A DNA stretch of 64,000 nucleotides, taken from assembly GCA_976226885.1 (NCBI GenBank), contig OZ320314.1, forward strand, positions 111,662,001-111,726,000, read 5' to 3'. Origin of the DNA: Iphione sp. A-MEVVRFRX5 (Eukaryota). A program made the position numbers and the translations under genes. Of the stretch, positions 10,697 through 64,000 are shown one piece after another (positions within the stretch are counted from its first letter, which is position 1; each line of letters starts with the position of its first letter). The notes under the pieces were generated by a model, which saw nothing but the letters and a program-made list of their open reading frames with translations, was not told where the DNA came from and searched no databases.

Positions 10697-10923
10697 CATT
10701 ATCCTGGATCAATACTTCTAATGAAGCAGTGTTGAAAATGACATTGGAAATATTACATCTTGCAGTTATATTGAATGTTTCTCTAAGTTCTGCTGTTTGA
10801 TCATCAGTAACATTGAAAGAAAATGGAAACTGACTTCCATTTGAGCTACCGGCTACTATTGTAATATCATAGTCATTCAATAAAACATCAGAGTTGGTTG
10901 TATCTCCATGTACAAGTGTAAGA
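10697..10923 (-). CDS. Exon Y2a (second half of domain Y)
   Basis: tttttcgtag acceptor, gtgagt donor, 227 nt, phase 2-1; GSQFPFSFNVTDD...IQDN. Confidence 0.9.
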
Positions 10924-11149
10924 CTACGAAAAATAGAAAAAATAATTGAAATCAATCAACTAATCGAACCAATACCATGAAATACAATTTATCTATATTA
11001 CTTAGATATTTAAGTAAAACAAAAGAGAAATGACCAAATTACTGGCTAAATAATACATGTTATTGTAACCTACATAAGTAATGAAAAGATGCCAATCTTA
11101 TCATCTATAATAAAAGATAAATAATTCAGAAACTAAATAAATTCCTTGC

Positions 11150-11264
11150 CTTATATCAATGCTTGAGTCAATTCCTCCAGCTGGTACATTACTGATTTCA
11201 AGTGTTCCATTTTCTTGTGAACCTTCCACTGTAGTCAGAATCTTTGGTTCAAAATCAACAGTAA
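11150..11264 (-). CDS. Exon Y1a (first half of domain Y), GC donor
   Basis: tttcag acceptor, AG/gcaagg donor, 115 nt, phase 1-2; ITVDFEPKILTTVEG...IDIS. Confidence 0.8.
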
Positions 11265-11867
11265 CTGAAACCATAAATATGTTAGTGAAGCAATGTAAAA
11301 CTATTGAAATTTGTGTAATAAATCCAATACTCAGATAGAATTGTAATTTTCCACTGGGGAATCTTACTATATTTTATGATACATTTTTCAAAAAGGTTAT
11401 AGACTACTGTAATTGAAGTTTTACCCTATAATTAATGGATTAATGAATGGATTTAATATGAAAACTGAAACTTAAGAAATTACTATTTACATCCTAGAGC
11501 TTTAAGAATTACACATGTGCTTTAGTGAAATAATGATACAAAGACAGAACAAGTGAGTATTCTTGCACCTTGTTATATATTTAGACCAAGGAATTTATGA
11601 TATATTTGTGGGAATGATTGATAGGTGACTGACTTAGACTAAATATATATTTTCAATTTAAGTTACATTTGACAAAATAAATAGAGACGAACAAAATATG
11701 AATGAAGAATGAACTCTCACTTTCATTTCATACATCTCATTCCATATTGTTAATCTTGACAAAAGAATTCCTCCTATCATAATTTAGGTAATCAAATGCA
11801 GCACACATATTCTTACTTAAATACTATGTACTTAGTATATATTCTAAGAAGAAAAGATAATACTCAC

Positions 11868-41191: not shown

Positions 41192-41770
41192 GGACAGGAT
41201 TTAAACCCGGTTATTTAGTATGAGCTGTCTCTCCATAGATTGTCTATGTCAAGTCTGGCACTCCTAACCACTGCACCACAGGGTCAGTACAAATATTTTA
41301 GTCCCCACACCTCTCAAGGGGCTCCCTGACCTCCAGGTCCTCATCTCATCAGGTGTTTCCCTGTCTTTGGAACTCTTTCTGTTGCCCTCAGAAGTCCCCA
41401 CACCTTGTTAGGTACTACCTTGGCCTTGGAACTCCTCCTGTCACCCTCAGAACTCCCCACACCTCATCAGGTGTCCCTCCTTCCTTAGAACTCCTCCTGT
41501 CACCCTCAGAAGTCCCACACCTCTTCAGATACTCCCCCAGCTTTGGAACTCTTCCTATTGCCCTTAGAAGACCCACACCTTGTTAGGTGTTCCTCCATCC
41601 GAGGAATTCCTCCTGTTACCCAAGAAGTCCCCTCACCTTGTCAGGTACTACCCCAGCCTTGGCCATCCTCTTGTTGAAAAATGTTCTTAATGTGTTTTAA
41701 AATGATTCCAAACATTATACCTGAATGAAAATGTTATAAAATGTTTTAAGAATGCTGTTTGCTAGCTTGG
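41192..41770. mobile_element. CCCAGC-terminus family element with a tRNA-like Pol III head (41192-41285, minus strand) and tandem repeats
   Basis: A box TGGTGCAGTGGTTAG, B box GGTTTAAATCC; ends GCTAGCTTGG; positional paralog of 18473-18934. Confidence 0.55.
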
Positions 41771-44396: not shown

Positions 44397-44667
44397 CTAG
44401 AAAAATAGAAATGATTGAAATTAATTTATTTATTTTTCTACAAGTTATCGATATTACCTATATATTTAAGTAAAACAAAGGAGAAATGATCAAATTAATA
44501 GCTAAAAAACACAAATATCCTCTTCCTCTTCCAAACATTCTAATATTGAAATCCATTTATTCTTTATATAATACATGTTATTGTATCCTACATAAGGAAT
44601 GAAAAGATGTCAATCCTATGATCTATAATGTAAAATGGATAATTCAAAGACTATATTTATATCTTGC

Positions 44668-44782
44668 CTTATATCAATGCTTGAGTCAATTCCTCCAGTT
44701 GGTACATTACTGATTTCAAGTGTTCCATTTCCTTGAGAACCTTCTATTGTAGTTAGAATCTTTGGTTCAAAATCAATAGTAA
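44668..44782 (-). CDS. Exon Y1c, GC donor
   Basis: tttttcag acceptor, AG/gcaaga donor, 115 nt, open. Confidence 0.8.
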
Positions 44783-45424
44783 CTGAAAAAATTAATATAT
44801 TTATGTAGCAATGTAAAAGTATTGGAATTTGTTTAACAAATCTAACACTTAGATATTATTGTAGTTTTCCTCTGGGGAATCTAACTATATTGTATGATAC
44901 AGTTTTCTAAAAGGTTATAGACTACTGCAATTCAAGTTCTACCCTATATTTAATATGAAAATTGAAACTTAAGAAATTACTATTTACATACCAGAGCTTT
45001 AATAATTACACATTGGCTTTAGTGAAATAATGATACAAACACGCAGAACAAGTGAGTATTTTCTTGCACATTGTATTGTATATAGACAAAGAAATTTATG
45101 ATATCTTTACAGACTTAGAGTAAACATTTATTTTCAATGTTGAAGTTACATTTTGTAAAATAAATAGAGAAGAATAAAAGATGAACAAAGATTCCAAAAC
45201 TTTCTGCACTTTCATTACATGCATGTCATTCCATATTAAGCTTAATGTCTAATATATTTTGTATCTCTTGTACATCCTGTATATCTTGCAGACTGATTAT
45301 CAACAATTAATCTTGACAAAATAATTCCTCCTATTATAATTCAAGTAATAAAATGTAGCACACATATTTTTACTAAAATACAAAGTACTTAGTATATATA
45401 CTAAGAAGAAAAGGTAATACTCAC

Positions 45425-52250: not shown

Positions 52251-52947
52251 TGGTAAGGTGTTTTGCCTGGTCAATGAGGCTATGCTGCTAAAAACATTTT
52301 GTCATCCATCTATTACTCATACTATCTAAATAATTTAGGTGAATAACTAAGTTTCAATAAAGTGATGTTATTTGGAATCTTTGTAACTCTTTATGGGACT
52401 TTTTAAAACCATGTATTGAGATATTAAATACAGCATATGATGTATTTTTGATGATGATGGTGAAGTAATGTAGAAATAACTGGGGAATTTTTGTATTAAC
52501 ATTAAGGGATCATGGATTTTGTATATAGCCACTTACAGAATTATGGAAAAAAATATTAGAGTCAGTAGGATTGTAGCTTGGACTTACTTTTAGAGAAATC
52601 TGTGAAGAAGGGCTAATAATTTTATAATTAATAGGTAACTAGGTAAGAATATCTCATATCAATTTGCCAGCTACATAGTTTTATTATTTGGAATTATACA
52701 AAAAGCATATATCTATAAGATAATCATTATACCTTCATATGTTCAAATGTATTTGAAGCCTACATACAATGAATTTGTGTCAATGTGAGTAATTGCAAAA
52801 TATACAGTTGAATTTCTCATATGTATTTTGTATTTAATCTCTTATCCATGAGATTTCAATTTGACTATTTGTATTGATCTGTTTAAGTAATTATTTGATT
52901 TTTCCTTTTAACCTTTTTTAAATAAATCATAATCTATTTCATTTAAG

Positions 52948-53050
52948 AGCCAATAATCTCTCCACCTGGAATTGTAAATGTACAAGAAGATGCTGGTCAT
53001 ACTGATATTTGCATAAATGTCTCTAATTCCGAAAGAGATTTCACTTTAAA
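52948..53050 (+). CDS. Exon X1c, intact but inverted: EPIISPPGIVNVQEDAGHTDICINVSNSERDFTLN
   Basis: catttaag acceptor, gtaagt donor, 103 nt; lies in a block (about 52270-53635) that is the reverse complement of about 13505-14765. Confidence 0.8.
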
Positions 53051-55713
53051 GTAAGTTTAATTTTATTTTCATTCATCCTACTTGAGACTTTGGAAAATAA
53101 TACTTTTTTCTTTCAAATCCTTTTATACATAGAAGGTTGTCAATATGTAAAGCAAATTAGACTAATCAATTAGACTAAATCTAATAAAAAATGCAACAGT
53201 TTTGGTTTATGATTTTGAAGTCAGAACTTTCCATCAGATGTTTTCTGTAAATGAAGGGCTTTTTACATTGTGGTCTTTGAATGTACATTTTACAAGAAAC
53301 CTTAGAAACAAAGACCTGAAATTGCTTCTCTCATGAACTTCCTGTCATCACAATACTTCATAACAAGATGGTTAATTCATGTGTGTAAGAGTTATGTTGT
53401 TTTAATGGTGAAATATTAAGATGAGTCCTTTCATTCAATAATTTATTACCTAAGTTATTTTATCTAGCAAAGTAATGCTTGATTAATATTATCTTATTGT
53501 TTAAGTAAAAATGTGTTATAAGATTACAAAAGACTTAAGAAGGGTCAAATCATTATCTACTACATGTACAAGTAAACATCTCAAATGCGGACACCCTTGG
53601 TTCTATCCTTAAGTATCCAGGTTTCAGATGTGTCCTGACTCTAAAGTCATTTTTACTTATCTCTGAGATATAGCAAAACCAAAAATATAGACTCTGACAT
53701 AAAAAGTAACAACATATATTTTCAGCTACTTTCAGGTCAAAGATATATAGTTCATAATGATTGTCATACCCTTTGCTTTACAAGAGCCACCAATATGTCT
53801 ATCTTTCTTTTATGCATAGCTGGTACCTTAAAATTGTCCTTATAGTGAAAATCCATAGAATTATGATCACTTATAATAACTTTATGTGTCTTGTTCATTA
53901 TAGGTAAAAGTTTTCAAAGGATGATTAGCAGTGTTATGCTTGTTTTGGTTTTCCTTTTAGAATACATTCATTTGTGATTCATGAGATAGCATGTCTCAGG
54001 TTAGATTGTCTGAACATAATGCTGCTAGAATGTCTTAAAATAATTATTTGCAACACCAACATACATTTAAGATATAAAATAAAATTCTTAAAAAGAAATT
54101 ATTGTTATTCATTGAACAGTTTAGACAGATAATGGAATAAATGGGAATTTTCCTCAATTCTTCATGTGTGAAGTTGAAAAAGGCCACCCTTCATTTATAA
54201 TACCTGTAGGATTAAATATAGTATCTAATAACTATATGTAACTATGTGTTACAACCAGAAATACAATTGGAAATGGTGTGACAGACTGTATGTATTTCCT
54301 TTACATTTAAGTAATTCAAAACTTTAAAATTGCTGGACAAATAAATACTCAATGCATTACTAAAAAAATTGAGGATGTCAGAATATATTGATATTTTAGC
54401 TCAAGATATCAAATAGATTTCTAATAGTTTAAAACGCTAGACATCTTGGCAACATTGATATAATTTTGAGCTGCATAGAGGTTATGTACTTTTCCATGAA
54501 AACCCTATGTTCTCACTAACAGCATGGACTAGACCTAAGTTTATATGATTTTAAACCACCCCTGCCACCCTCTTCTCTCTTTGTCCCTACCATCTCCCCG
54601 AGTACACCAACACTCCCCTTGTTCCAAATATTTTTATGAATTTAATGCATCTTGCCACCTTTTCATATAGTCAATGCATCTTTAGCCAAATCTCTGGTAG
54701 TATTTGCCACTATTCATGAATTAAGCATATCTTTAGCACTAGCTCCGGAAATATTCACTGCCTTTTCATGACTGAATGCATCTTTCGCATAGCCTCCAGA
54801 AATATATTTTTCCCTTTCATTAATGTGGGGAGAGACTCCCCACACACCCCTCTTTCCCTTCTTTTTTAATTTCTTTCTTTTTTTACAATTATGACAGTCT
54901 TCTCTAATTTACTCATCACTTTGATTGTTCTTCACTGAATTATCACATTGTTCAGGTGAGCCTCGGTGGACTCAACCCTCTTGACCGGGTCAGCAAATTG
55001 CTCAGTTGTAGGATGGGGTAGTTTGAATTAGATAAAGTCCTCAGTCACACTACTATAATGTACTCATTGCTAAAATGACCTTGAACATTGTAGTATGTAA
55101 TCATGTGGACTCATTCTTTATCTAATACTTGTCATGACATCAATTTAAACCAAAGAGACTAACTTTTGCTACCTAAATATTGATCTATATTTAAAAGATT
55201 TGGCCACAGACTGGTTGAAAATAGTATACTACATATTTTCTCTCCAAAGTAGCTTTCTTTAAAATTATTATTTTCAGGAGATTGTGGTATTTATTCTGAT
55301 TGAATATGCAAAAAATGTTCATTACACTGCTCTGTGAGATACCTAGGTAATTGTAGGCATTAATGTTTGTAGTATTGATTATCAGTTTAAGAGTAACAAT
55401 TTTATCATTCAAAGATTAGGTTGATATAAATAGAATGCTTTGATTAAACATGAGATAGGTATTTTTAGATTAGGAAATGTTAATATTTGCTATGGTCAAT
55501 CAATGTTATAGCATATCTAGAAAATAGCAACAGTTATAATATGTTATCAAAAATTAACAGCCTGTAGAATACTAGTGGTACCTTTGACAAAGATACATAG
55601 TAAATCTTAATTGAATTGTTGGCTTGAAATAAACTAATCATATTAGTGTTATTATCATTGTAGAACACAAAGAAAAGAGCAGACAATACATTTCTTATAA
55701 ATCCATTACTTAC

Positions 55714-55940
55714 CATCATCATCATCAATGATATTAACAACAGCAGTGGAGGGATATCCAAATATTATATCAGGATTTGATGAAGTTAATGTGACATTGA
55801 AGTATTCATCAAACTCAAAGTTGATGTCAATTACTATAGGGATCTCAATTTGATATGTACCAGAGCCATTTAGTAACCTTTCTATAGTTTCTGGGCTGTC
55901 ATAATCACTGTTAAGAGCAGTCTGTGAGATGATGCTTAAA
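55714..55940 (-). CDS. Exon Z2d
   Basis: cattacag acceptor, gtaagt donor, 227 nt (one extra Asp codon), open. Confidence 0.88.
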
Positions 55941-56377
55941 CTGTAATGAGAAACCATAGAAATGTAAAAGAAACTGGACAATGACATGTTATATAATTGG
56001 AAAGATAAAGTTTAGAAGAGAAGTGGAAATATAAAAACATGTAGAAAGTAAACATTAAAAATTTTAGAAACAAAATTTAGTCATATTATTAATGTTGTCT
56101 TCAAAGTCATCCCATGAATGTAGGTTATTTTTCTGAGTATTGTACAGAGTTGTCTATTAGTATCATAGTTTGAAAAAGAGATATTGCTAGAGATATAACA
56201 GATGATAATTTTGGAAGCACTGTTACATTATTGTGCCTAATTTTAGAGTCAGTCTCTGTATATGAGGGCCAGATTTTCTTGAATAAAGGGAGTTTCTCAT
56301 TGCACTGGAAGAGAACAACACCAGACTCATCTACTTTATGAACATTCTTCATTTTGTCAAGTCATCCATTCCGAACA

Positions 56378-57431
56378 TCAGAGACACTTTACAGTGTGAT
56401 AGGTGGTGAAACACCCTGGCAGGCATAAGTGAACACCACACTCTCTACACCCATACATTGTTTGACATTTGGTTGCCTGACACCCAATCACATGACACTT
56501 ATAGCAAATCCTGCAGAAACTCTTGTTGACTAAATCAGCAGGAGAGCACCTGTTAGTTAACGGCCTCTCATCTGTTTTTGCCAGATTCATTATCCTTTGC
56601 TGTTCTAAACACACTTGAAGAGCATGCTTAATGGATAGATGACGGAACATGGATTAACCTTTTATCTTTCCACAGGGATAGGATGAGATGAGCTTTACAT
56701 GCAAAATACATTGATCCCATAGCTGTCACGAATGATACCTTCTTTTTCATGAGATTTTTTGGAGGCCTGCGTGATTCAGCCTCACAGTTCCACAAAAGAA
56801 TGTGAAGAACTGAATCAATCTTTGGAACAATGGTATGCTTGAAAAATGATTATCTATATATGTACGATAATTTTGCTCTATTGTCCACCATGGTTCTTCC
56901 CTCCCTCTATCTTAGCCCTGCTGCTCACACTGTCCACAATTCTGCTGATGAACTCAGTAGACAGGAAGAGCCGATAGAAATCAAACAGTGTTTTTGTCTT
57001 TTCCAAATTGACTTCATCAGCTAGGCCTGTTTTCTCATTGAAATCATTCTTGAGCATCTTCTGATGGAGTCCTCTTGTGCTCTATCTACCTGCCATTATT
57101 GATGTTCTTAGCTTCGTCGGTGAGATCATCCAGAGACATATCGTCATCAAAGATGGCTGGGTCTTCATTCACTTTCATTGCTGCTGTTCTCCCATTCCGA
57201 ATCATCTTTGTTGGCATTATTAAGCAGCTTATAAGTCCAGCTCATCCTCTGAATCTGACTGGACATCCGAGAATTCCTCGTCTGATGCCATTTTCAATAG
57301 GCCAACACACCTAGTTCAAATGTTGTTGGCTGCCTCAGCAGGGCTGGGCAGGGAAAGCAGTGCAGAAAGCACATCATTCGAAAATGTCATGACTTGGATT
57401 GCTATGGAATTCATAGTTCCTCCCAAACCAT
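56378..57431 (-). mobile_element. piggyBac transposase remnant, internally deleted
   Basis: Acidic N-terminus MASDEEFSDVQSDSEDELD from ATG at 57291; WKDKRLIHVPSSIH (the piggyBac W.D.R.V..LS..H motif); C-terminal CRICY...YGCRECGVHLCLPGCFTTYH domain. TIRs and TTAA not found. Confidence 0.85.
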
Positions 57432-57776
57432 CTAAAACAATACATATTTATCTATTTTTTATCAAAATTATTAATTTACTTATATTATTTCTATATTAAA
57501 TCGTTATGCAAAAAATAATAGTCTATTTAATGCCTCAAGACTTCATTGGCACCCTGATAATATATATTGATGTAAAGAATAAATGGTTTTCAATATTAAA
57601 ATATGCAGGAGTGCTACAGGATAGCTGGTTTTGTTAGCAATAAAATGGATACCTCCTCACCTCTACTTAAATATCCTGGTAATGTAGATAACTTGAATTT
57701 AAAGATATTATTCCAATAGTTAAATTTACGTTATAATCATCACTTTAATGAGACAAATTGATTTATAATTTTCTAG

Positions 57777-58003
57777 TCTTGGACTTCTCCATGGAGAAAC
57801 AGACAATACTGATGTCTTCTTAAATGATCACAGTGTCACAATAATGTCTGGTAGTTTAACTGGCAGTCAGTTTCCATTTTCTTTCAATGTCACTGATGAT
57901 CAAACAGTGGAATTTGGAGAAACATTCAATATAACTGCAAGAAGTAATATTTCAAATGTCATTTTCAATGCTGTTCCATTAATAGTGTCAATCCAGGATA
58001 ATG
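57777..58003 (+). CDS. Exon Y2d, intact but inverted
   Basis: ttttctag acceptor, gtgagt donor, 227 nt, open; LGLLHGETDN...GSQFPFSFNVTDD...IQDN. Confidence 0.82.
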
Positions 58004-58030
58004 GTGAGTATTTATCTTTGACTTGGCCTT

Positions 58031-58997
58031 CCCAGCCAACACAAAAATTTTCAAATATTCAAAAACTGAGAGTATGCAATAATGTTTTCTTATCTAGATT
58101 AGAAAACATTTTTTGAAATGTTTGTAGCACAATTTTGAAAAACATTTCTTAGAATTTTGTATAAAAAGTGTCAACAGGTCTGGACAGGGTTTGAACCTGG
58201 ATCTTCCACATGTCAGTCTCCACACATTGTCCATGCATGTAGAGGCCGGTACTTTTACCCACAGGGCCACAGGAGCTAGGCAAAATTCATTCATTGCAGG
58301 GTTAAAGCTGTACTGTGGTTAGGGCTTTCACTACATTTACTTTATTTAATTATACTTTCATCCAGTGTATTAATGGGGGGCAGGTCTTCACAGCTTCCCT
58401 ATTTCTTTGCCATATTTTCAGGAATTGCAAGCATGTTTAGCATGACCTCCAAAAATAATTTTTTTCTTACAAATTCAGTGCCACTTTAGAGGAACCTCCA
58501 GTAATATATGCCACTCTTCATAATTTAAACAGATCTTCAGAATAGCTTGCAAAAGTATTTTTCCCATTCATTTTTAAAAATTTTAACCATGTCTGCCTAA
58601 AATATCATATAAAGTAAGTTGTGCATTATTCTTCGTAGTCTGTCCTCCTGTCACATTTAGTAGTTCCCACACTTTGTCAGGTGCTCCCCCCTCTCTTTGA
58701 CATCCTCCTGTCACCCTCAGAAGTCGCTATACTTTGCCAGGTACTTCCTGTGCTTTTGCTGTCCTCCTGCCACTTTTGGAAGCCCCAACACTTCATCAGG
58801 TACCCCCCTGCCTTGGTTACCTCCTGTTGCCCTCAGAAGTCTCTACACTTTATCAGGTGCTCCCCCAGCCTTGACCAATCTCCTGTCACTAAAATTTTCT
58901 TATATTTATATATTTTCTAATATTTAAAGTGCTTGCAGACGTTAATACCAAATGAAAACATTAAAAAACATTCTGAAAGCATTCTGTGCTGGCTGGG
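58031..58997. mobile_element. Complete 967-bp CCC...GGG non-autonomous DNA element with a tRNA-like head (58177-58276, minus strand) and tandem repeats
   Basis: TIRs CCCAGCCAACAC and CCCAGCCAGCAC, TT TSD; A box TGGCCCTGTGGGTAA, B box GGTTCAAACCC. Confidence 0.75.
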
Positions 58998-59451
58998 TTT
59001 TTACTTAATCTCTGGATATATGCATTACTCAACAAAAACACTTTATATAAATATTTGCATTCAGTCTATGTTAGTTTATAATATAGCTCCATATCATAAT
59101 GTAAAAACGAAGGTTCTATAACATACTGTAGAACGTAATCTTATGCATAAAAAGCATCTGCATCTGAGAGAATGTATGCCCTAGTTTGTTATATTTGACC
59201 ATGATTTATTTGATAGAAATAGTACCATGGTGAATCTGTACCAATAGAGTAGCAACTCACCAATGCCACCACCTAAGGGACAGTATGAAACTGCCCACCA
59301 CTGTTGGTGTTACATTTTTGAATGCATTCTGTATACTAAAGTTATGCAAAACTATTTACTACTGTAGAATGCCCCCTCAGTGGAGATGCCTGTAAAGTGA
59401 CATGCCACTGTATTACAAAACCATACTGAAGCTACATTCTTCTTCCTCCAG

Positions 59452-59560
59452 ATCCACTACTCCAGTTGTCAGGGCCATCATATGATGTGAATGAAAATGA
59501 TAGTTCTGTCATTATACAAGTACAAGTGCTAAATACACAAATAGAAGGAGTCACTTTCAA
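59452..59560 (+). CDS. Exon Z1d, intact but inverted: DPLLQLSGPSYDVNENDSSVIIQVQVLNTQIEGVTF
   Basis: ttcttcttcctccag acceptor, gtgagt donor, 109 nt, open. Confidence 0.82.
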
Positions 59561-60299
59561 GTGAGTAAAATCAATCTGCATAATATTAGTTCAATTCATT
59601 TCTTTTTATCTTAAATAATTTGTTTTATCTTCTTGATTCAGAAATTTACAATGTTACCATATGGTCCTTCCATATACTGGACTTTGAAGGGTAGGCTAAT
59701 AGAATAGATGAGCATAATAGCACCGGACATATATTTGAGGTAAGATGTCTGGAACAGCGTTAGAAACCAGAATATGGAATACAGAAAAAACTACGAAAGT
59801 AAAATGAAAAGCTTCTTCATTTAGATTCGATTGTAGTACTCACTTAATACAATAAGAGATGTATTTTTCATTTGAAGGGTATGTTTCTGAGTCATATTTT
59901 GATAATACTTTATAGTTTACATTGTCTTTTTTAAGATGACAGCTATTTCTTACTTGTGAATTTCTTAAAGGATATTGTTGGCTTCTGCCATAATAAAGAC
60001 GACATGTATCTGTGAGGATGGTTGTTTATTGCTGAAGAGCTCAAACACAACTGACACTAGAATCGTGAATAGGCACACTTATATAGCAAAATGATCATCC
60101 TTCAACTTAAGTAATCCCCCCCTCCGCAGTATTGCATGAATCTGCCGCCCCTCCGCTGAAGTTTCCTCTGCAATTACATCTCTTGCTACATTACCCCCTC
60201 CTTATTCTAATCCTGTCCCAGGATATTGTAACACTCATGAACTTCGAAATCAACATCACTATCATTAAAAAAACTCTAACCTGATATCAAACTCATCAA

Positions 60300-63200
60300 T
60301 TTGTAAACCTAGGGGTACCGGGCGTACCCCTCTATACCAGTCCAAGAAAATGAACCCTTTCTCTCCTTGGGGGGGAGTGCCAACCTCCCTCTTTGTAACC
60401 AGACTCAGCTTTCTACAACCATGCACATTCTCCCCCTCCTCCATGCAATTCGTCCTTTACCCACTGAAAGAAGTATAGTCCAACCACAGGGGGGTCGGTA
60501 AATAATGTCACTGGCCTCCGTGAGGCCCTACAGATCCAGTCTGTGAGAATGAGAGTCTGCGTACTATTGCGGCGGTTCAGCCTACCAGGCGAAAGTGGTT
60601 GTGACAGTTCAGCCCCCCCCAAGGAGTCCGACCCCCCAGCCGACCTGACAGGGGGAGGTATCTCTACCCTGCTGCACCGTCTGGGAGGAGGTTACATCTT
60701 CCTCCCCTCCGAGTTGGTCACCCTCTGCCGTTTGGAGGGGTGCCCTCCTCCCTTCGTTGCTGGGGCACGGAACGGCGTGGGAGGAGGTCCCGTCACCTTC
60801 CCTCCCATGTTTGTCACCCTCCGCTGGTTGGAGTGGCACCTTCCTTCTGGCTCGGTTTGGGCCCAGGTCGGTGTGGGAGGAGGTCCCATCACCTTCCCTC
60901 CCATGTTCGTCACCCTACTCCAGATGGAGGGGCACATTCTCAACGATGTTGTCGTGGGAAGGGGGCCCTGCCCCCCCACTCCCTTTGCCCCCCCCCATCC
61001 TCTGAGGCAGAGGGGCTGGCCAGCTGGTGTGGCATGTCATCGTGGGAAGGGGGCCTGGCCCCCCCAATCCCATCTTGGCCCCCCTCCCCCCCGTCACAGG
61101 GGGGGGCTTACTTTCGGTCACGGCCAGAGCAGGAGGTTGTGGCAGTCTCTCCCCTGCTCCCATGGCCCTCCGTGGTGGAAGAGGGCTCGGTCGCAGCTAT
61201 GCTTGGGGTTCGGAGGAGCGCTAGCCCCTCACAAACCAGACTGGAGCTTGGAGGGGGAAGCAGCTTCCCCCCTCCCCTTGTTGGTGTCGGAGGTGGGTCC
61301 CCAGCCTCCAGTCCCTCCCCGGTGGGGACGGTCTCTGGTGCTCGTCGGGCGTCAGCTGCTGCTGGGCTTCCCAGTCCAACACTTGCCGGGCAATTCATCT
61401 CGACTTCTCCACCTCCTCATGGCCGATCTGAACGGTGATGGTTCATGTCCCCCCACCACCCCACCCATTTCCACGTACTGGACTTCTTGTGGGGGCTTCT
61501 CAGGGCTCTGGCCTCCCTCACTGGAATGGATGGGTGGGCCCACCAAGGATCCGAAGGAGGAATCTCCTCCCTCTGCGGCCCCAGGCTGACTGGCCATCTC
61601 TCCCGTCCAGGGCTTCTCTTCCGAGGTTGGCAGAGGAACTGACAGTGGATGCACGGCTGCTAGCAACGTGCCCATGTCCACGGCCCCAAACAGGTCCACC
61701 AGGACCTGGGCCGCTTGATCTACTTCTGCCTGCGGGGCTTTAGGCCCCTCCCCTGCGGAGGAGACAAAGGTTTGGATGGCAACATTGAGTTCATCAGGTC
61801 TCAGGGGCATAGTGGGAGTCCAGAGGAGAGGTGAGGGCACTGTCCACTGATGCATTGGGGTCTTGAGAAGGGGGGATAGGGCCTTATCTGGTAGCCCCCC
61901 CCCTTTCTTTCCTGTCAATTCCGTTTGGGTGGCCGTCGTCTTCCCAGGGGTGCTCCCTGTCCTCTTCCCCTTCAGCAGTTCTGGCGTATGGAGGGATGGC
62001 TTGGAGGGAGTCAGCCCTAGCCCCTTGCCGGGCATCAAGGGGCTAGAGGCTGACAGGCCGGGTCTTAGGTTGGCCATACACATGGCCACCTCGAGGTCAC
62101 TGGCTGCGGCAAGCAGCTTTTCCATGGCCACTGGTGTCAACGGGGAGCCGGGGAATTCCGCTGCGTTGATTCGCTCGATAGCTTCCTGTAATTGGGCATA
62201 GCTTCCCCCATCCCCTCTTTATTGGCCAACTGTCGTACCCGTGGGTGTGCTGGTGGATCAACGTCCGCCTCCTTTGGCTCTGTTTTTTTCCCCTTGGGGG
62301 CGGCAGCATCTTCTTGGAGGGGCCCGCCGCCTTGGTCTGCTTGGTGGGGTTGGCTCTGGTCACCTCTTCTTGGGCACTTCCTCTTCCTCCTTCTTCTTGG
62401 GCCCAGTTTGATGCAACCAGACGCAGGCGGCCAAGTGCGATCGGCGAGGTGGGACACTCTCCTCTGAGGAAGTAGTTTGGATAACTGGCCTCCGCCGCAG
62501 ACTTTCTCTGTGACCCGTGGAGGTTCCGAGCTGGGGGAAAGACGGTGCCCGGCCTGGAGCTCAAAGCGATGGCATTGGGAGGGTTGGCCCAGCGGGCTCG
62601 TTGTCGGAGGTCGAGGGGAGTCATGGCTTCTTTCTTTTCAGTGGTGTCTGGGTATCGGCTCGCTGGGGGGACTTTGGATGAGGATAACTCTACTCCTCCC
62701 TCTTCTGACTTCTTTTCTTCTCCTTATTGCAACAGCTGTGGTGGGATGCCAAGGTTGCTGAGGCTGCTTCTCTGAACTTTCTTCAGTTGAGGTGCCCTCA
62801 CGCCGGGCTGCCGCAAGTGCCCCCACAGGTTTTGTGACCCCGGCTTCCAGTAGAACTCATAGTATTCTTCCTTGAGGGTCGGCATAATTTTCTGGGACCC
62901 TCCCTCAGTGAGATGGGTCTTCGAGCCCCTCAGCATCCCCATGCAAATCCTTCAGAACTGTGTGTATGCACGTGCCGCTTGAGGTTGTCTTTTCAATCAC
63001 ACTCGAATGATTGAAGATCCTGGGGACCACTGTTGCTTATATTTGAATTTCGTGCCGCACCTCCCTCTGCTTCAATCTCATTGGCAAAGGGGGCTCCTCC
63101 GCATTTCTGCCTCCTCTGCACCTTCCGTTTGGCCCTCTGATTGGTTGCTTTTCTTTGAACCCCAATGGTCATGGAATCGCGGAGGGACAGCGGTTTTCTC

Positions 63201-64000
63201 CGCATTCTGTCCAAGTCATCTCGTTTGATGCGGAGTGTTGCTATGATGATGCTGAGTTCCCCCCGGACTCCCTGCTTCAGAAGATCGGCATGTACCACCT
63301 TCTCTCGGCGCCCTTTCTTGATACGGTAGACAGCTTCTGGTAGTTGCTTGCTAACTCGCCATTGGCCTTACCAGTATCATTGCAGCTTCGGTGACAGCCC
63401 TTGTCTCTTCAGTGGAAGGAAGAGGTAGACCTCCTTGCCCTCCGTGAACTTTTGGGGCCTCACTTGCTGGTTGTACCAGTCCGTCTGCTGGTGAATTCCC
63501 TCAGCTAGTCACTGGTTGGCTAGCTGGTAGGCCTGTCTCATTCACTCCATCTGCTGTCACGCCTAAGGCCCAACCTCCATACCCTCCTCTTGCAGAGGGC
63601 CCCCATAGGCAACTTCGATGGGGAGCGTGGTTTCTCGGTTCAACAGAAGGAAATTTGGGGAGAACTTAGTGGTCCGGTGGGGGGTTGCCCAATAGGCAGC
63701 TGTGATTAAGGGAAGCCGGAGATCCCAACCGCGTTGGTCCTCCCGCATGGTGGTAGCGAGCATGTGTTCCAGGGTCCAGTTAAACCTCTCAAGCATCCCA
63801 TCTGCCTGAGGATGGTAGGGGGTCGTTCTGGTTTTCTGAACTCCACAATGCGCAAGCAGTTGTCCCACCAACTCTGCCTCAAAGTTCTGCCCTTGGTCGC
63901 TATGAATGACCTGCGGAGGGCCGAACCTGCAAATTACTTCCTTGATCAGTACTTCTGCTGTAGCCTCCACGGTTTGCTCCTTGAGTGGGAAAGCCTCTAC
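60300..64000 (-). mobile_element. Gypsy element F, 3' part: integrase plus about 2.8 kb of post-integrase GC-rich coding-like region; continues off the right edge
   Basis: HSDQGQNFE, TTPYHPQADG, VVHADLLK. Left boundary and 3' LTR not resolved. Confidence 0.85.
60660..60950. repeat. Three 96-bp tandem repeats inside element F
   Basis: TGGGAGGAGGT anchors at 60682, 60778 and 60874. Confidence 0.85.

What the first reader, a model, noticed from the sequence alone, without database searches (positions are those of the whole stretch)
57535..60050. Second in-place inversion removes a second-half plus first-half pair (Y2d, Z1d), which would create an in-frame chimeric Y1-Z2 domain
Seen: Y2d and Z1d with their introns lie on the plus strand, open and with good splice sites, between a piggyBac remnant and Gypsy F; flipping restores Y2d-Z1d-Z2d. 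Because Y1 ends and Z2 begins in phase 2, an upstream Y1 (expected beyond the window) could splice directly to Z2d in frame. Two independent exon-containing inversions within 8 kb is striking. Inference: inversions act as a domain-shuffling mechanism in this gene.
Basis: partly seen in the sequence, partly recalled or inferred. Interest (0 to 1): 0.7.

Follow-up and report, generated by a model that had tools for sequence, protein, structure and literature searches.

The report
Large inversion inside a repeat-domain gene
The two plus-strand exons are real, but they are the first 2.5 kb of a 19.7-kb, eight-exon inversion inside a giant Calx-beta repeat gene, and that inversion sits at the edge of a 40-kb-arm palindrome that is either very recent or an assembly error.

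Summary
Observation confirmed.

The inverted DNA does not stop at Gypsy F. The plus-strand exons continue as Z2, X1, X2, Y1, Y2 and Z1 up to ext 77287, 13.3 kb beyond the window.

The breakpoints are reciprocal. One lies about 75 nt into a Y1-Y2 intron. The other lies about 80 nt inside a piggyBac, whose two parts now sit 19.7 kb apart in opposite orientation. Un-flipping the 19.7 kb restores a perfect X-Y-Z exon order.

A sense Y1 does exist upstream. Y1 to Z2d splicing would be in frame, but this was not tested.

The inverted segment is also the outer end of an inverted repeat with 40-kb arms. The arms flank one full LINE as a 6.6-kb spacer. The inner 35,343 bp of the arms are perfectly identical, and the outer 4.7 kb differ by 1.4%. 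The ancestral junction survives on the other arm.

This could be a LINE-bridged fold-back duplication or an assembly error. No reads could be obtained to decide.

The parts
55714..55940 (-). Z2d, a second-half Calx-beta exon. It is the first sense exon downstream of the inversion.
   Evidence: Pfam Calx-beta E 0.0049, profile positions 67-119. Acceptor cattacag|T is phase 2 and donor GATG|GTAAGT is phase 1.
56199..57553 (-). Internally deleted piggyBac remnant that lacks its 5' terminal ~80 nt. Its truncated 5' end is breakpoint J1.
   Evidence: 67% protein identity to a PF13843 transposase of the same family in L036. Family homology starts at 57545. Homology of the gene unit to the other units stops at 56198.
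57553..57556 (.). Breakpoint J1, where piggyBac interior is joined to the Y1-Y2 intron (the Y2 side) in inverted orientation.
   Evidence: Homology to the mirror arm and to units b and c starts here. The reciprocal junction JB lies at ext 77287.
57777..58003 (+). Y2d, a second-half exon on the plus strand.
   Evidence: It has one amino-acid difference from the mirror copy (F versus L).
58030..59035 (.). About 1 kb of interspersed and tandem-like repeat inserted in the Y2d-Z1d intron.
   Evidence: Absent from units a, b and c. Many copies lie on other chromosomes.
59452..59560 (+). Z1d, a first-half exon on the plus strand.
   Evidence: Its homolog Z1c matches Pfam Calx-beta positions 7-37 (E 0.019).
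60050..64000 (-). Gypsy F, which continues to about ext 66000. It is an insertion in the Z1d-Z2 intron, not an inversion boundary.
   Evidence: rve hit E 5e-7. The same Z1-Gypsy-Z2 arrangement is present on the mirror arm next to the ancestral junction.
57555..62236 (.). Outer part of the left palindrome arm, 1.37% diverged from the right arm.
   Evidence: 64 differences, all in this interval. The first mismatch counting from the centre is at 62236.
62237..64000 (.). Start of the 35,343-bp stretch that is perfectly identical to its mirror copy. It runs on to ext 97579.

Best explanation
Coordinates: 'ext' continues window numbering beyond 64000 (ext 1 = G000:C2:111662001).

The gene. It lies on the minus strand and is a long tandem array of three Calx-beta domains, X, Y and Z. 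Each domain is split into a first-half exon (phase 1 to 2) and a second-half exon (phase 2 to 1).

The inversion. On the haplotype in the window, a two-break, nearly conservative inversion flipped 19.7 kb (window 57554 to ext 77287). One break was about 75 nt into the Y1-Y2 intron. The other was about 80 nt inside the 5' end of a piggyBac sitting in a Z1-Z2 intron. The flipped piece carries Y2d, Z1d, Gypsy F, Z2, X1, X2, Y1, Y2 and Z1. The sense exons left at the edges are Y1 and Z2d, which are phase-compatible, so the gene could still be read through as a chimeric Y1-Z2 domain. That last step is inferred, not shown.

The palindrome. In the assembly, the inverted segment together with the next 20 kb (the left arm, LA, 57555-97579) is repeated as a mirror image (the right arm, RA, ext 104170-144122). 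One intact three-ORF LINE lies between the arms as the spacer. The far end of the mirror arm keeps the ancestral, un-inverted Y1-Y2 intron.

Most likely reading (inferred). Two haplotypes that differ by the inversion are both represented. They were joined either by a real LINE-bridged fold-back duplication, resolved by exchange with the homolog inside the inverted segment, or by a mis-walk of the assembler.
For: 1. Plus-strand exons continue past Gypsy F. They are Z2 66210-66436, X1 69169-69273, X2 70147-70338, Y1 70561-70677, Y2 70992-71213 and Z1 72119-72226. Orientation returns to minus at 77287.
2. Junction JB at ext 77287 reads TTAA plus 72 nt of piggyBac end joined to intron. Junction J1 at 57553 reads piggyBac interior joined to the other side of the same intron. 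In at least 8 other copies of this piggyBac family the two pieces are contiguous to within 14 nt or less.
3. The junction JA on the mirror arm (ext 144123) is collinear with units b and c across the whole Y1-Y2 intron. JB keeps its left part and J1 its right part, with about 1 nt unaccounted for.
4. Un-flipping gives ...X2 Y1|Y2 Z1 Z2 X1 X2 Y1 Y2 Z1|Z2d, the exact period of the array.
5. Palindrome: left arm 57555-97579 against right arm 104170-144122. The inner 35,343 bp are identical, and all 64 differences lie in the outer 4.7 kb.
6. The spacer is a complete LINE with APE and RT domains and a NADAR-bearing ORF1. It is unique in the genome, with the next best copy at 72%.
7. Exons match Calx-beta in Pfam, and one exceeds the gathering score (28.6 against 27).
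Against: No sequencing run was listed, so neither the junctions nor the copy number could be checked against reads.

A stretch of 35 kb with zero differences is what an assembler produces when it walks the same sequence twice. The palindrome, though not junctions J1 and JB, may therefore be artificial.

No RNA evidence exists that the gene is expressed or that Y1 splices to Z2d across a 21-kb intron full of antisense exons and transposons.

Another inverted exon (X1c) 4.5 kb downstream could by itself disturb the reading frame.
Confidence: 0.8

Rival explanations
1. A 2.5-kb segment (57535-60050) carrying only Y2d and Z1d flipped in place between the piggyBac remnant and Gypsy F. Z2d is its downstream partner and Y1d lies on the minus strand beyond Gypsy F.
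For: Flipping 2.5 kb locally gives the order Y2d-Z1d-Z2d. Homology to units a, b and c covers just this block within the window.
Against: A plus-strand Z2 follows Gypsy F at ext 66210-66436, and five more plus-strand exons follow it. The Z1-Gypsy-Z2 arrangement is uninterrupted on the arm that carries the ancestral junction. No breakpoint signature exists at 60050. The reciprocal partner of J1 is at ext 77287.
Confidence: 0.03
2. Pure assembly artefact. The real genome has no inversion here, and the plus-strand block results from a mis-oriented or chimeric join.
For: 35,343 bp of perfect mirror identity. The ancestral junction JA is present in the same contig. An unplaced contig, C82, holds a 94.8% copy of a nearby unit, so leftover haplotigs may exist. 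No reads were available.
Against: J1 and JB join non-homologous sequences. They are reciprocal to within about 1 nt in the intron and about 8 nt in the piggyBac. Assemblers join on overlaps and do not create reciprocal non-homologous junction pairs. The hairpin turn is a unique LINE, not a collapsed repeat. There are no N gaps anywhere in the 264 kb examined.
Confidence: 0.08
3. The inversion is real but the palindrome is not. The individual is heterozygous for the inverted and ancestral arrangements. The assembler threaded both haplotypes into one contig and used about 35 kb of haplotype B twice.
For: Zero differences over 35 kb followed by an abrupt rise to 1.4%. The copy called S (ext 144124-169551), which adjoins JA, is 98.7-99.1% identical to the arm copies, an allele-like level. 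The ancestral junction J0 and a second piggyBac remnant are absent from the assembly, as expected if the other haplotype was purged.
Against: It needs a hairpin turn supported by reads. Both LINE ends abut the same nucleotide of the same unique flank in opposite orientation, and the LINE is single-copy. This is hard to obtain without a real molecule. Most assemblers do not reuse a 35-kb unique unitig.
Confidence: 0.4
4. The plus-strand exons belong to a separate, independently transcribed paralog lying head to head with the minus-strand gene.
For: Eight consecutive intact plus-strand exons with good splice sites.
Against: The block starts with a second-half exon right at a breakpoint and ends with a first-half exon followed by a 72-nt transposon stump. 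No 5' or 3' terminal exons were seen. Its mirror copy is collinear with the minus-strand array.
Confidence: 0.03

Closest known systems
Simple two-break (NHEJ-type) intragenic inversion
   Same: The two novel junctions, J1 and JB, are reciprocal products of two old ones, with only a few nucleotides lost.
   Different: One break lies inside a piggyBac, about 80 nt from its end and not at the TTAA/TIR boundary. It is therefore not a transposase-made 'alternative transposition' inversion. The ancestral junction also survives in the same contig.
Fold-back inverted duplications with a single-copy spacer (Hermetz et al. 2014, PMC3907307)
   Same: Inverted arms are separated by a non-duplicated spacer. 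That paper reports spacers of 0.77-70 kb with a median of 3.4 kb. The spacer here is 6.6 kb.
   Different: There is no terminal deletion, translocation or ring here. The far arm runs back into normal upstream sequence through an inverted segment. The spacer is exactly one LINE. Copy number is unverified.
L1-bridged fold-back inversion of sister chromatids in human tumours (Rodriguez-Martin et al. 2020, PMC7058536, Fig. 7c-d)
   Same: A LINE insertion bridges two head-to-head copies of the same sequence. No target-site duplication is present, and both arms end at the same nucleotide.
   Different: This would be germline, in an invertebrate, with a full-length three-ORF LINE. No endonuclease motif or poly(A) tail was recognised. 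It would have been resolved without telomere loss.
DUP-TRP/INV-DUP rearrangements mediated by inverted repeats (PMC4352052)
   Same: One segment is present three times with the middle copy inverted: S (ext 144124-169551) and its copies S' and S''. A flanking segment, R1 (the 19.7-kb inverted segment), is present twice. One junction lies inside inverted homologous sequence.
   Different: The inverted homologous sequences here would be the two orientations of a polymorphic inversion on homologs, not fixed low-copy repeats.
Sponge aggregation-factor genes (Calx-beta arrays thought to evolve by exon shuffling; Grice et al. 2017, PMC5400394)
   Same: Long arrays of Calx-beta domains bounded by phase-1 introns, with within-gene repeats that include introns.
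   Different: In AqAF genes all introns but one are phase 1 and domains have a three-exon structure. Here each domain has two exons with an internal phase-2 intron. No Wreath domain was looked for.

Membership tests
Calx-beta domain (PF03160) | Match to the Pfam profile at or above the gathering score | tested here: met
   Tested exon by exon only, with no joined model. The plus-strand Z2 (L011:2217-2435) scores 28.6 bits against a cutoff of 27. Other second halves score 17-25 bits on profile positions 53-119, and first half Z1 scores 15.4 bits on positions 7-37. Atlas feature hits are mostly Calx-beta.
Sponge aggregation factor (AF) genes | Three-exon Calx-beta modules with all introns in phase 1 | tested here: not met
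   Here there are two exons per domain with phases 1/2/1, against the description in PMC5400394.
Sponge aggregation factor (AF) genes | C-terminal Wreath domain | not tested
   The gene ends were not located.
Reciprocal two-break inversion | The two novel junctions together contain both sides of two ancestral junctions | tested here: met
   Intron side: JA against J1 and JB. piggyBac side: intact family copies against J1 and JB.
Transposase-mediated (alternative transposition) inversion | Breakpoint exactly at the element terminus, with a new TTAA target duplication at the other breakpoint | tested here: not met
   The break lies about 80 nt inside the element, between subterminal repeats. No TTAA is present at the intron breakpoint.
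Fold-back inverted duplication | Inverted arms separated by a single-copy spacer | tested here: met
   Arms 57555-97579 and 104170-144122, with spacer 97580-104169.
Fold-back inverted duplication | Arms present at twice the copy number of the flanks in the actual DNA | not testable with these tools
   No sequencing run was listed.
LINE-bridged fold-back | LINE insertion at the arm-to-arm junction without a target-site duplication | tested here: met
   The spacer is one LINE with ORF1-NADAR, an esterase-like ORF (by motif only) and APE-RT. Its two flanks are exact reverse complements of each other.
LINE-bridged fold-back | Endonuclease target motif and 3' tail at the priming site | tested here: inconclusive
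   No poly(A) or simple-repeat tail is seen at ext 97580. The family's true 3' end could not be defined because other copies are only 72% alike.

The most novel reading that the evidence does not exclude
The palindrome is real. In the germline of a carrier heterozygous for the 19.7-kb inversion, a LINE integration bridged the two sister chromatids head to head at one nucleotide. The resulting fold-back chromosome was then rescued to a normal monocentric one by an exchange with the un-inverted homolog inside the inverted segment. The switch point is at 62236, within Gypsy F. The outcome is a 40-kb-arm palindrome inside a Calx-beta array gene. This would be a germline counterpart of the L1-bridged fold-back known so far from tumours. 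It would also show a polymorphic inversion acting as the 'inverted repeat' that resolves the fold-back.
Probability: 0.35. Interest if true: 0.75.

Novelty: new member of a known kind. Interest (0 to 1): 0.5.

Why it matters
The gene is built from half-domain exons with symmetric phases. Because of this, large rearrangements such as an eight-exon inversion need not destroy the reading frame. Any first half can splice to any second half. The locus is therefore a natural test of whether structural variants create chimeric or shortened domain arrays.

Both breakpoints are defined to within a few nucleotides, and a split piggyBac serves as an internal marker. This makes the inversion directly testable by PCR in populations.

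If the palindrome is real, it documents a LINE-bridged fold-back in a germline genome. If it is not, it is a useful example of how a heterozygous inversion can produce a false 35-kb mirror duplication inside a gap-free chromosome-level contig.

Tried and rejected
- The look-up of sequencing runs on window:56200-59600 (kind any) listed no run. Read laying could therefore not be used, and no DNA or RNA check was possible.
Later genome-search runs returned coordinates only.
- The look-up of encoding contigs with ORFs spanning JB and J1 found nothing on record.
- Pfam on the small ORFs of the piggyBac remnant gave no hit. Family identity was established instead through an intact copy.
- No clear LTR pair was found for Gypsy F.
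- The idea that the hairpin turn comes from a collapsed young LINE family was rejected, because the LINE is single-copy and the next best copy is 72%.
- The idea that piggyBac transposase made the inversion was rejected, because the break is internal and not at the terminus.
All protein evidence is exon by exon.
- The large protein searches were not used, because exon-level family scans had already settled the domain type.

Full report
**Coordinates.** The window is G000:C2:111662001-111726000. I fetched 200 kb to its right and use 'ext' coordinates that continue window numbering (ext 64001-264000). There are no N runs in these 264 kb.

**1. The observation.**
- Y2d is at 57777-58003 on the plus strand and Z1d at 59452-59560 on the plus strand. 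Both are open, with canonical acceptors and GTGAGT donors.
- They are clear homologs of minus-strand exons at 10916/10468, 20471/19934 and 44389/43848 (tblastn E 1e-11 to 1e-32).
- Exon-level Pfam scans place second-half exons on Calx-beta profile positions 53-119 and first halves on positions 7-37. One exon passes the gathering score. An Atlas feature search agrees.
- Profile searches of all six frames give a repeating unit X1 X2 Y1 Y2 Z1 Z2.
- First halves start in phase 1 and end in phase 2. Second halves start in phase 2 and end in phase 1.
- All eleven Y1 copies use a conserved AG|GCAAG (GC-type) donor.

**2. The extent of the inversion.** The plus-strand orientation does not end at Gypsy F.
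- After the Gypsy (rve hit) come six more plus-strand exons: Z2 at ext 66210-66436, X1 at 69169-69273, X2 at 70147-70338, Y1 at 70561-70677, Y2 at 70992-71213 and Z1 at 72119-72226.
- Minus-strand exons resume only at ext 77287: Y1 77476-77362, X2 78264-78073, X1 79227-79123 and Z2 81575-81360.
- Gypsy F is thus an ordinary insertion in the Z1d-Z2 intron.

**3. The breakpoints.**
- At ext 77211-77287 there is TTAA followed by 72 nt of a piggyBac 5' end (CCCTATCCAGG...), on the plus strand. It is abruptly joined to the Y1-Y2 intron about 75 nt downstream of the Y1 donor. This is junction JB.
- At window 57553 the internally deleted piggyBac remnant (minus strand) ends without its terminus and is joined to the other side of the same intron. 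This is junction J1. The remnant is 67% identical in protein to a PF13843 transposase of the same family.
- In at least eight other genomic copies of this family, the 72-nt end and the sequence that begins the remnant are contiguous. At most about 8 nt is unaccounted for.
- On the mirror arm, junction JA (ext 144123) is collinear with units b and c throughout the Y1 exon, its donor and the whole intron. JB keeps the part up to ...CAGTCCATAT and J1 keeps the part from TGATAATATAT... onward, leaving about 1 nt unassigned.
- J1 and JB are therefore the reciprocal products of two breaks, one in an intron and one inside a piggyBac. This is a 19.7-kb inversion.
- Un-flipping it gives ...X2 Y1 | Y2 Z1 [Gypsy] Z2 X1 X2 Y1 Y2 Z1 | [piggyBac] Z2d..., the exact period of the array.
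- The ancestral partner of Z2d is the Z1 at ext 72119-72226, not Z1d.
- An assembler cannot plausibly invent a reciprocal pair of non-homologous junctions. I take the inversion as real on at least one haplotype.

**4.
- The sense exons left at the edges are Y1 (ext 77476-77362) and Z2d (55940-55714).
- Y1 ends with two nucleotides of a codon and Z2d starts with one. Direct splicing would therefore be in frame and would build a chimeric Y1-Z2 Calx-beta domain.
- This would skip four domain-equivalents, not one.
- It follows from the sequence but is untested. The intron would be about 21 kb long and full of antisense exons and transposons.

**5. The palindrome.**
- The block 57555-97579 (left arm, LA) is an inverted repeat of ext 104170-144122 (right arm, RA).
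- All 64 differences lie between 57555 and 62236, a divergence of 1.37%.
- From 62237 to the centre, 35,343 bp are identical base for base.
- The 6,590-bp spacer is one complete LINE on the minus strand. It has an ORF1 with a NADAR domain, a 220-aa ORF with an SGNH-esterase-like motif (by eye only), and a 943-aa APE-RT ORF.
- This is the three-ORF LINE type already noted in this genome (s1-320262, s1-327777).
- The LINE is single-copy. The next best match in its 5' region is 72%.
- Its two flanks are exact reverse complements ending at the same nucleotide, with no target-site duplication.
- Each arm contains the inverted segment R1 plus a copy of the upstream region, here called S. S itself follows the right arm in direct orientation at 98.7-99.1% identity. 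It carries an extra 11.4-kb LTR element.
- The order along the assembly is: D, J1, R1 inverted, JB, S', T3, LINE, T3 inverted, S'' inverted, JB, R1, JA, S, upstream. D is the window sequence to the left of J1. T3 is the 5.5-kb innermost part of each arm (ext 92085-97579 and its mirror).
- The contig thus holds both the derived junctions (J1, and JB twice) and one ancestral junction (JA), but not J0.

**6. Reading the palindrome.** Two explanations fit, and I could not separate them.
- (a) Real. A LINE-bridged fold-back of sister chromatids, as described for human tumours (PMC7058536), with a spacer of typical size for fold-back duplications (PMC3907307). It would then have been resolved by exchange with an un-inverted homolog inside R1. 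The switch from 1.4% to 0% divergence at 62236 would mark that exchange.
- (b) Artefact. The individual is heterozygous for the inversion, and the assembler threaded both haplotypes and reused 35 kb.
- For (a): the hairpin turn is unique sequence with both junctions at the same base, and there are no gaps.
- For (b): identity is perfect over 35 kb, the divergence of the outer parts is allele-like, and an unplaced contig (C82) holds a 94.8% copy of a nearby unit.
- I put the real palindrome at roughly 0.35-0.5.
Depth, spanning reads and RNA could not be examined.

**7. Comparison with known systems.**
- The gene resembles other metazoan Calx-beta arrays with phase-1 domain boundaries. It differs from sponge aggregation-factor genes, which have three-exon modules and all-phase-1 introns (PMC5400394).
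- The rearrangement types are known: a two-break inversion, a fold-back or LINE-bridged inverted duplication, and a DUP-TRP/INV-DUP-like copy pattern.
- What would be new is their combination in a germline invertebrate genome.

**Verdict.**
- The in-frame Y1-Z2d possibility stands as an inference.
- The surrounding palindrome needs read-level validation before any biological claim is made.

Noticed in passing
window 52947-53051 (+), within 52302-53638: Exon X1c is intact, with splice sites, on the plus strand. All other copies in same-sense parts of the array are on the minus strand. The block is an inverted homolog of unit a 13506-14731 at 79-87% identity, so it is much older than the 19.7-kb inversion. 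If X1c alone were skipped, Z2d (ends in phase 1) to X2c (starts in phase 2) would be out of frame.
   Followed up: partly
ext 97580-104169 (C2:111759580-111766169), minus strand: A full-length three-ORF LINE lies exactly at the palindrome centre: ORF1 with a NADAR domain (E 3e-28), a 220-aa ORF with an esterase-like motif, and a 943-aa APE-RT ORF. It is single-copy at high identity. It is of the same design as the LINEs noted elsewhere in this genome.
   Followed up: partly
window 11149-11265, 20752-20868, 44667-44783 and eight further Y1 copies: Every Y1 exon ends with a conserved AG|GCAAG donor. The Y1-Y2 intron is therefore a GC-AG intron, kept through all duplications of the unit.
   Followed up: partly
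ext 146281-157704 (C2:111808281-111819704): An 11.4-kb LTR retrotransposon with 830-bp LTRs that are 98.3% identical. It is present in copy S but absent, with no solo LTR, from the two arm copies S' and S''.
   Followed up: no
L010 = G000:C82:8651-11478: A small unplaced contig carries a 94.8% identical copy of unit f (ext 174972-177791). It may be a leftover divergent haplotig of this locus or a further paralog.
   Followed up: partly
window 58064-58890: An interspersed repeat of about 0.8 kb in the Y2d-Z1d intron has dozens of 66-75% copies on many chromosomes. Its 58643-58902 part resembles the tandem-like repeat at 41262-41730.
   Followed up: no
ext 92084/92085 versus ext 169551 and 170673-171268: Homology between S' and S ends at a sharp breakpoint. 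The next 630 bp of the arm match S-side sequence 1.1 kb further on, in inverted orientation and at 93%. This is either another structural difference between the copies or a different insertion of the same transposon family.
   Followed up: no
L035, L036, L040 5' ends; ext 77215-77287: This piggyBac family has three subterminal direct repeats of about 24 nt (GGGTGATGCCC.AGGCACTCCCGG) just inside the TTAA/CCCTA terminus. The inversion break fell between the second and third repeats.
   Followed up: no
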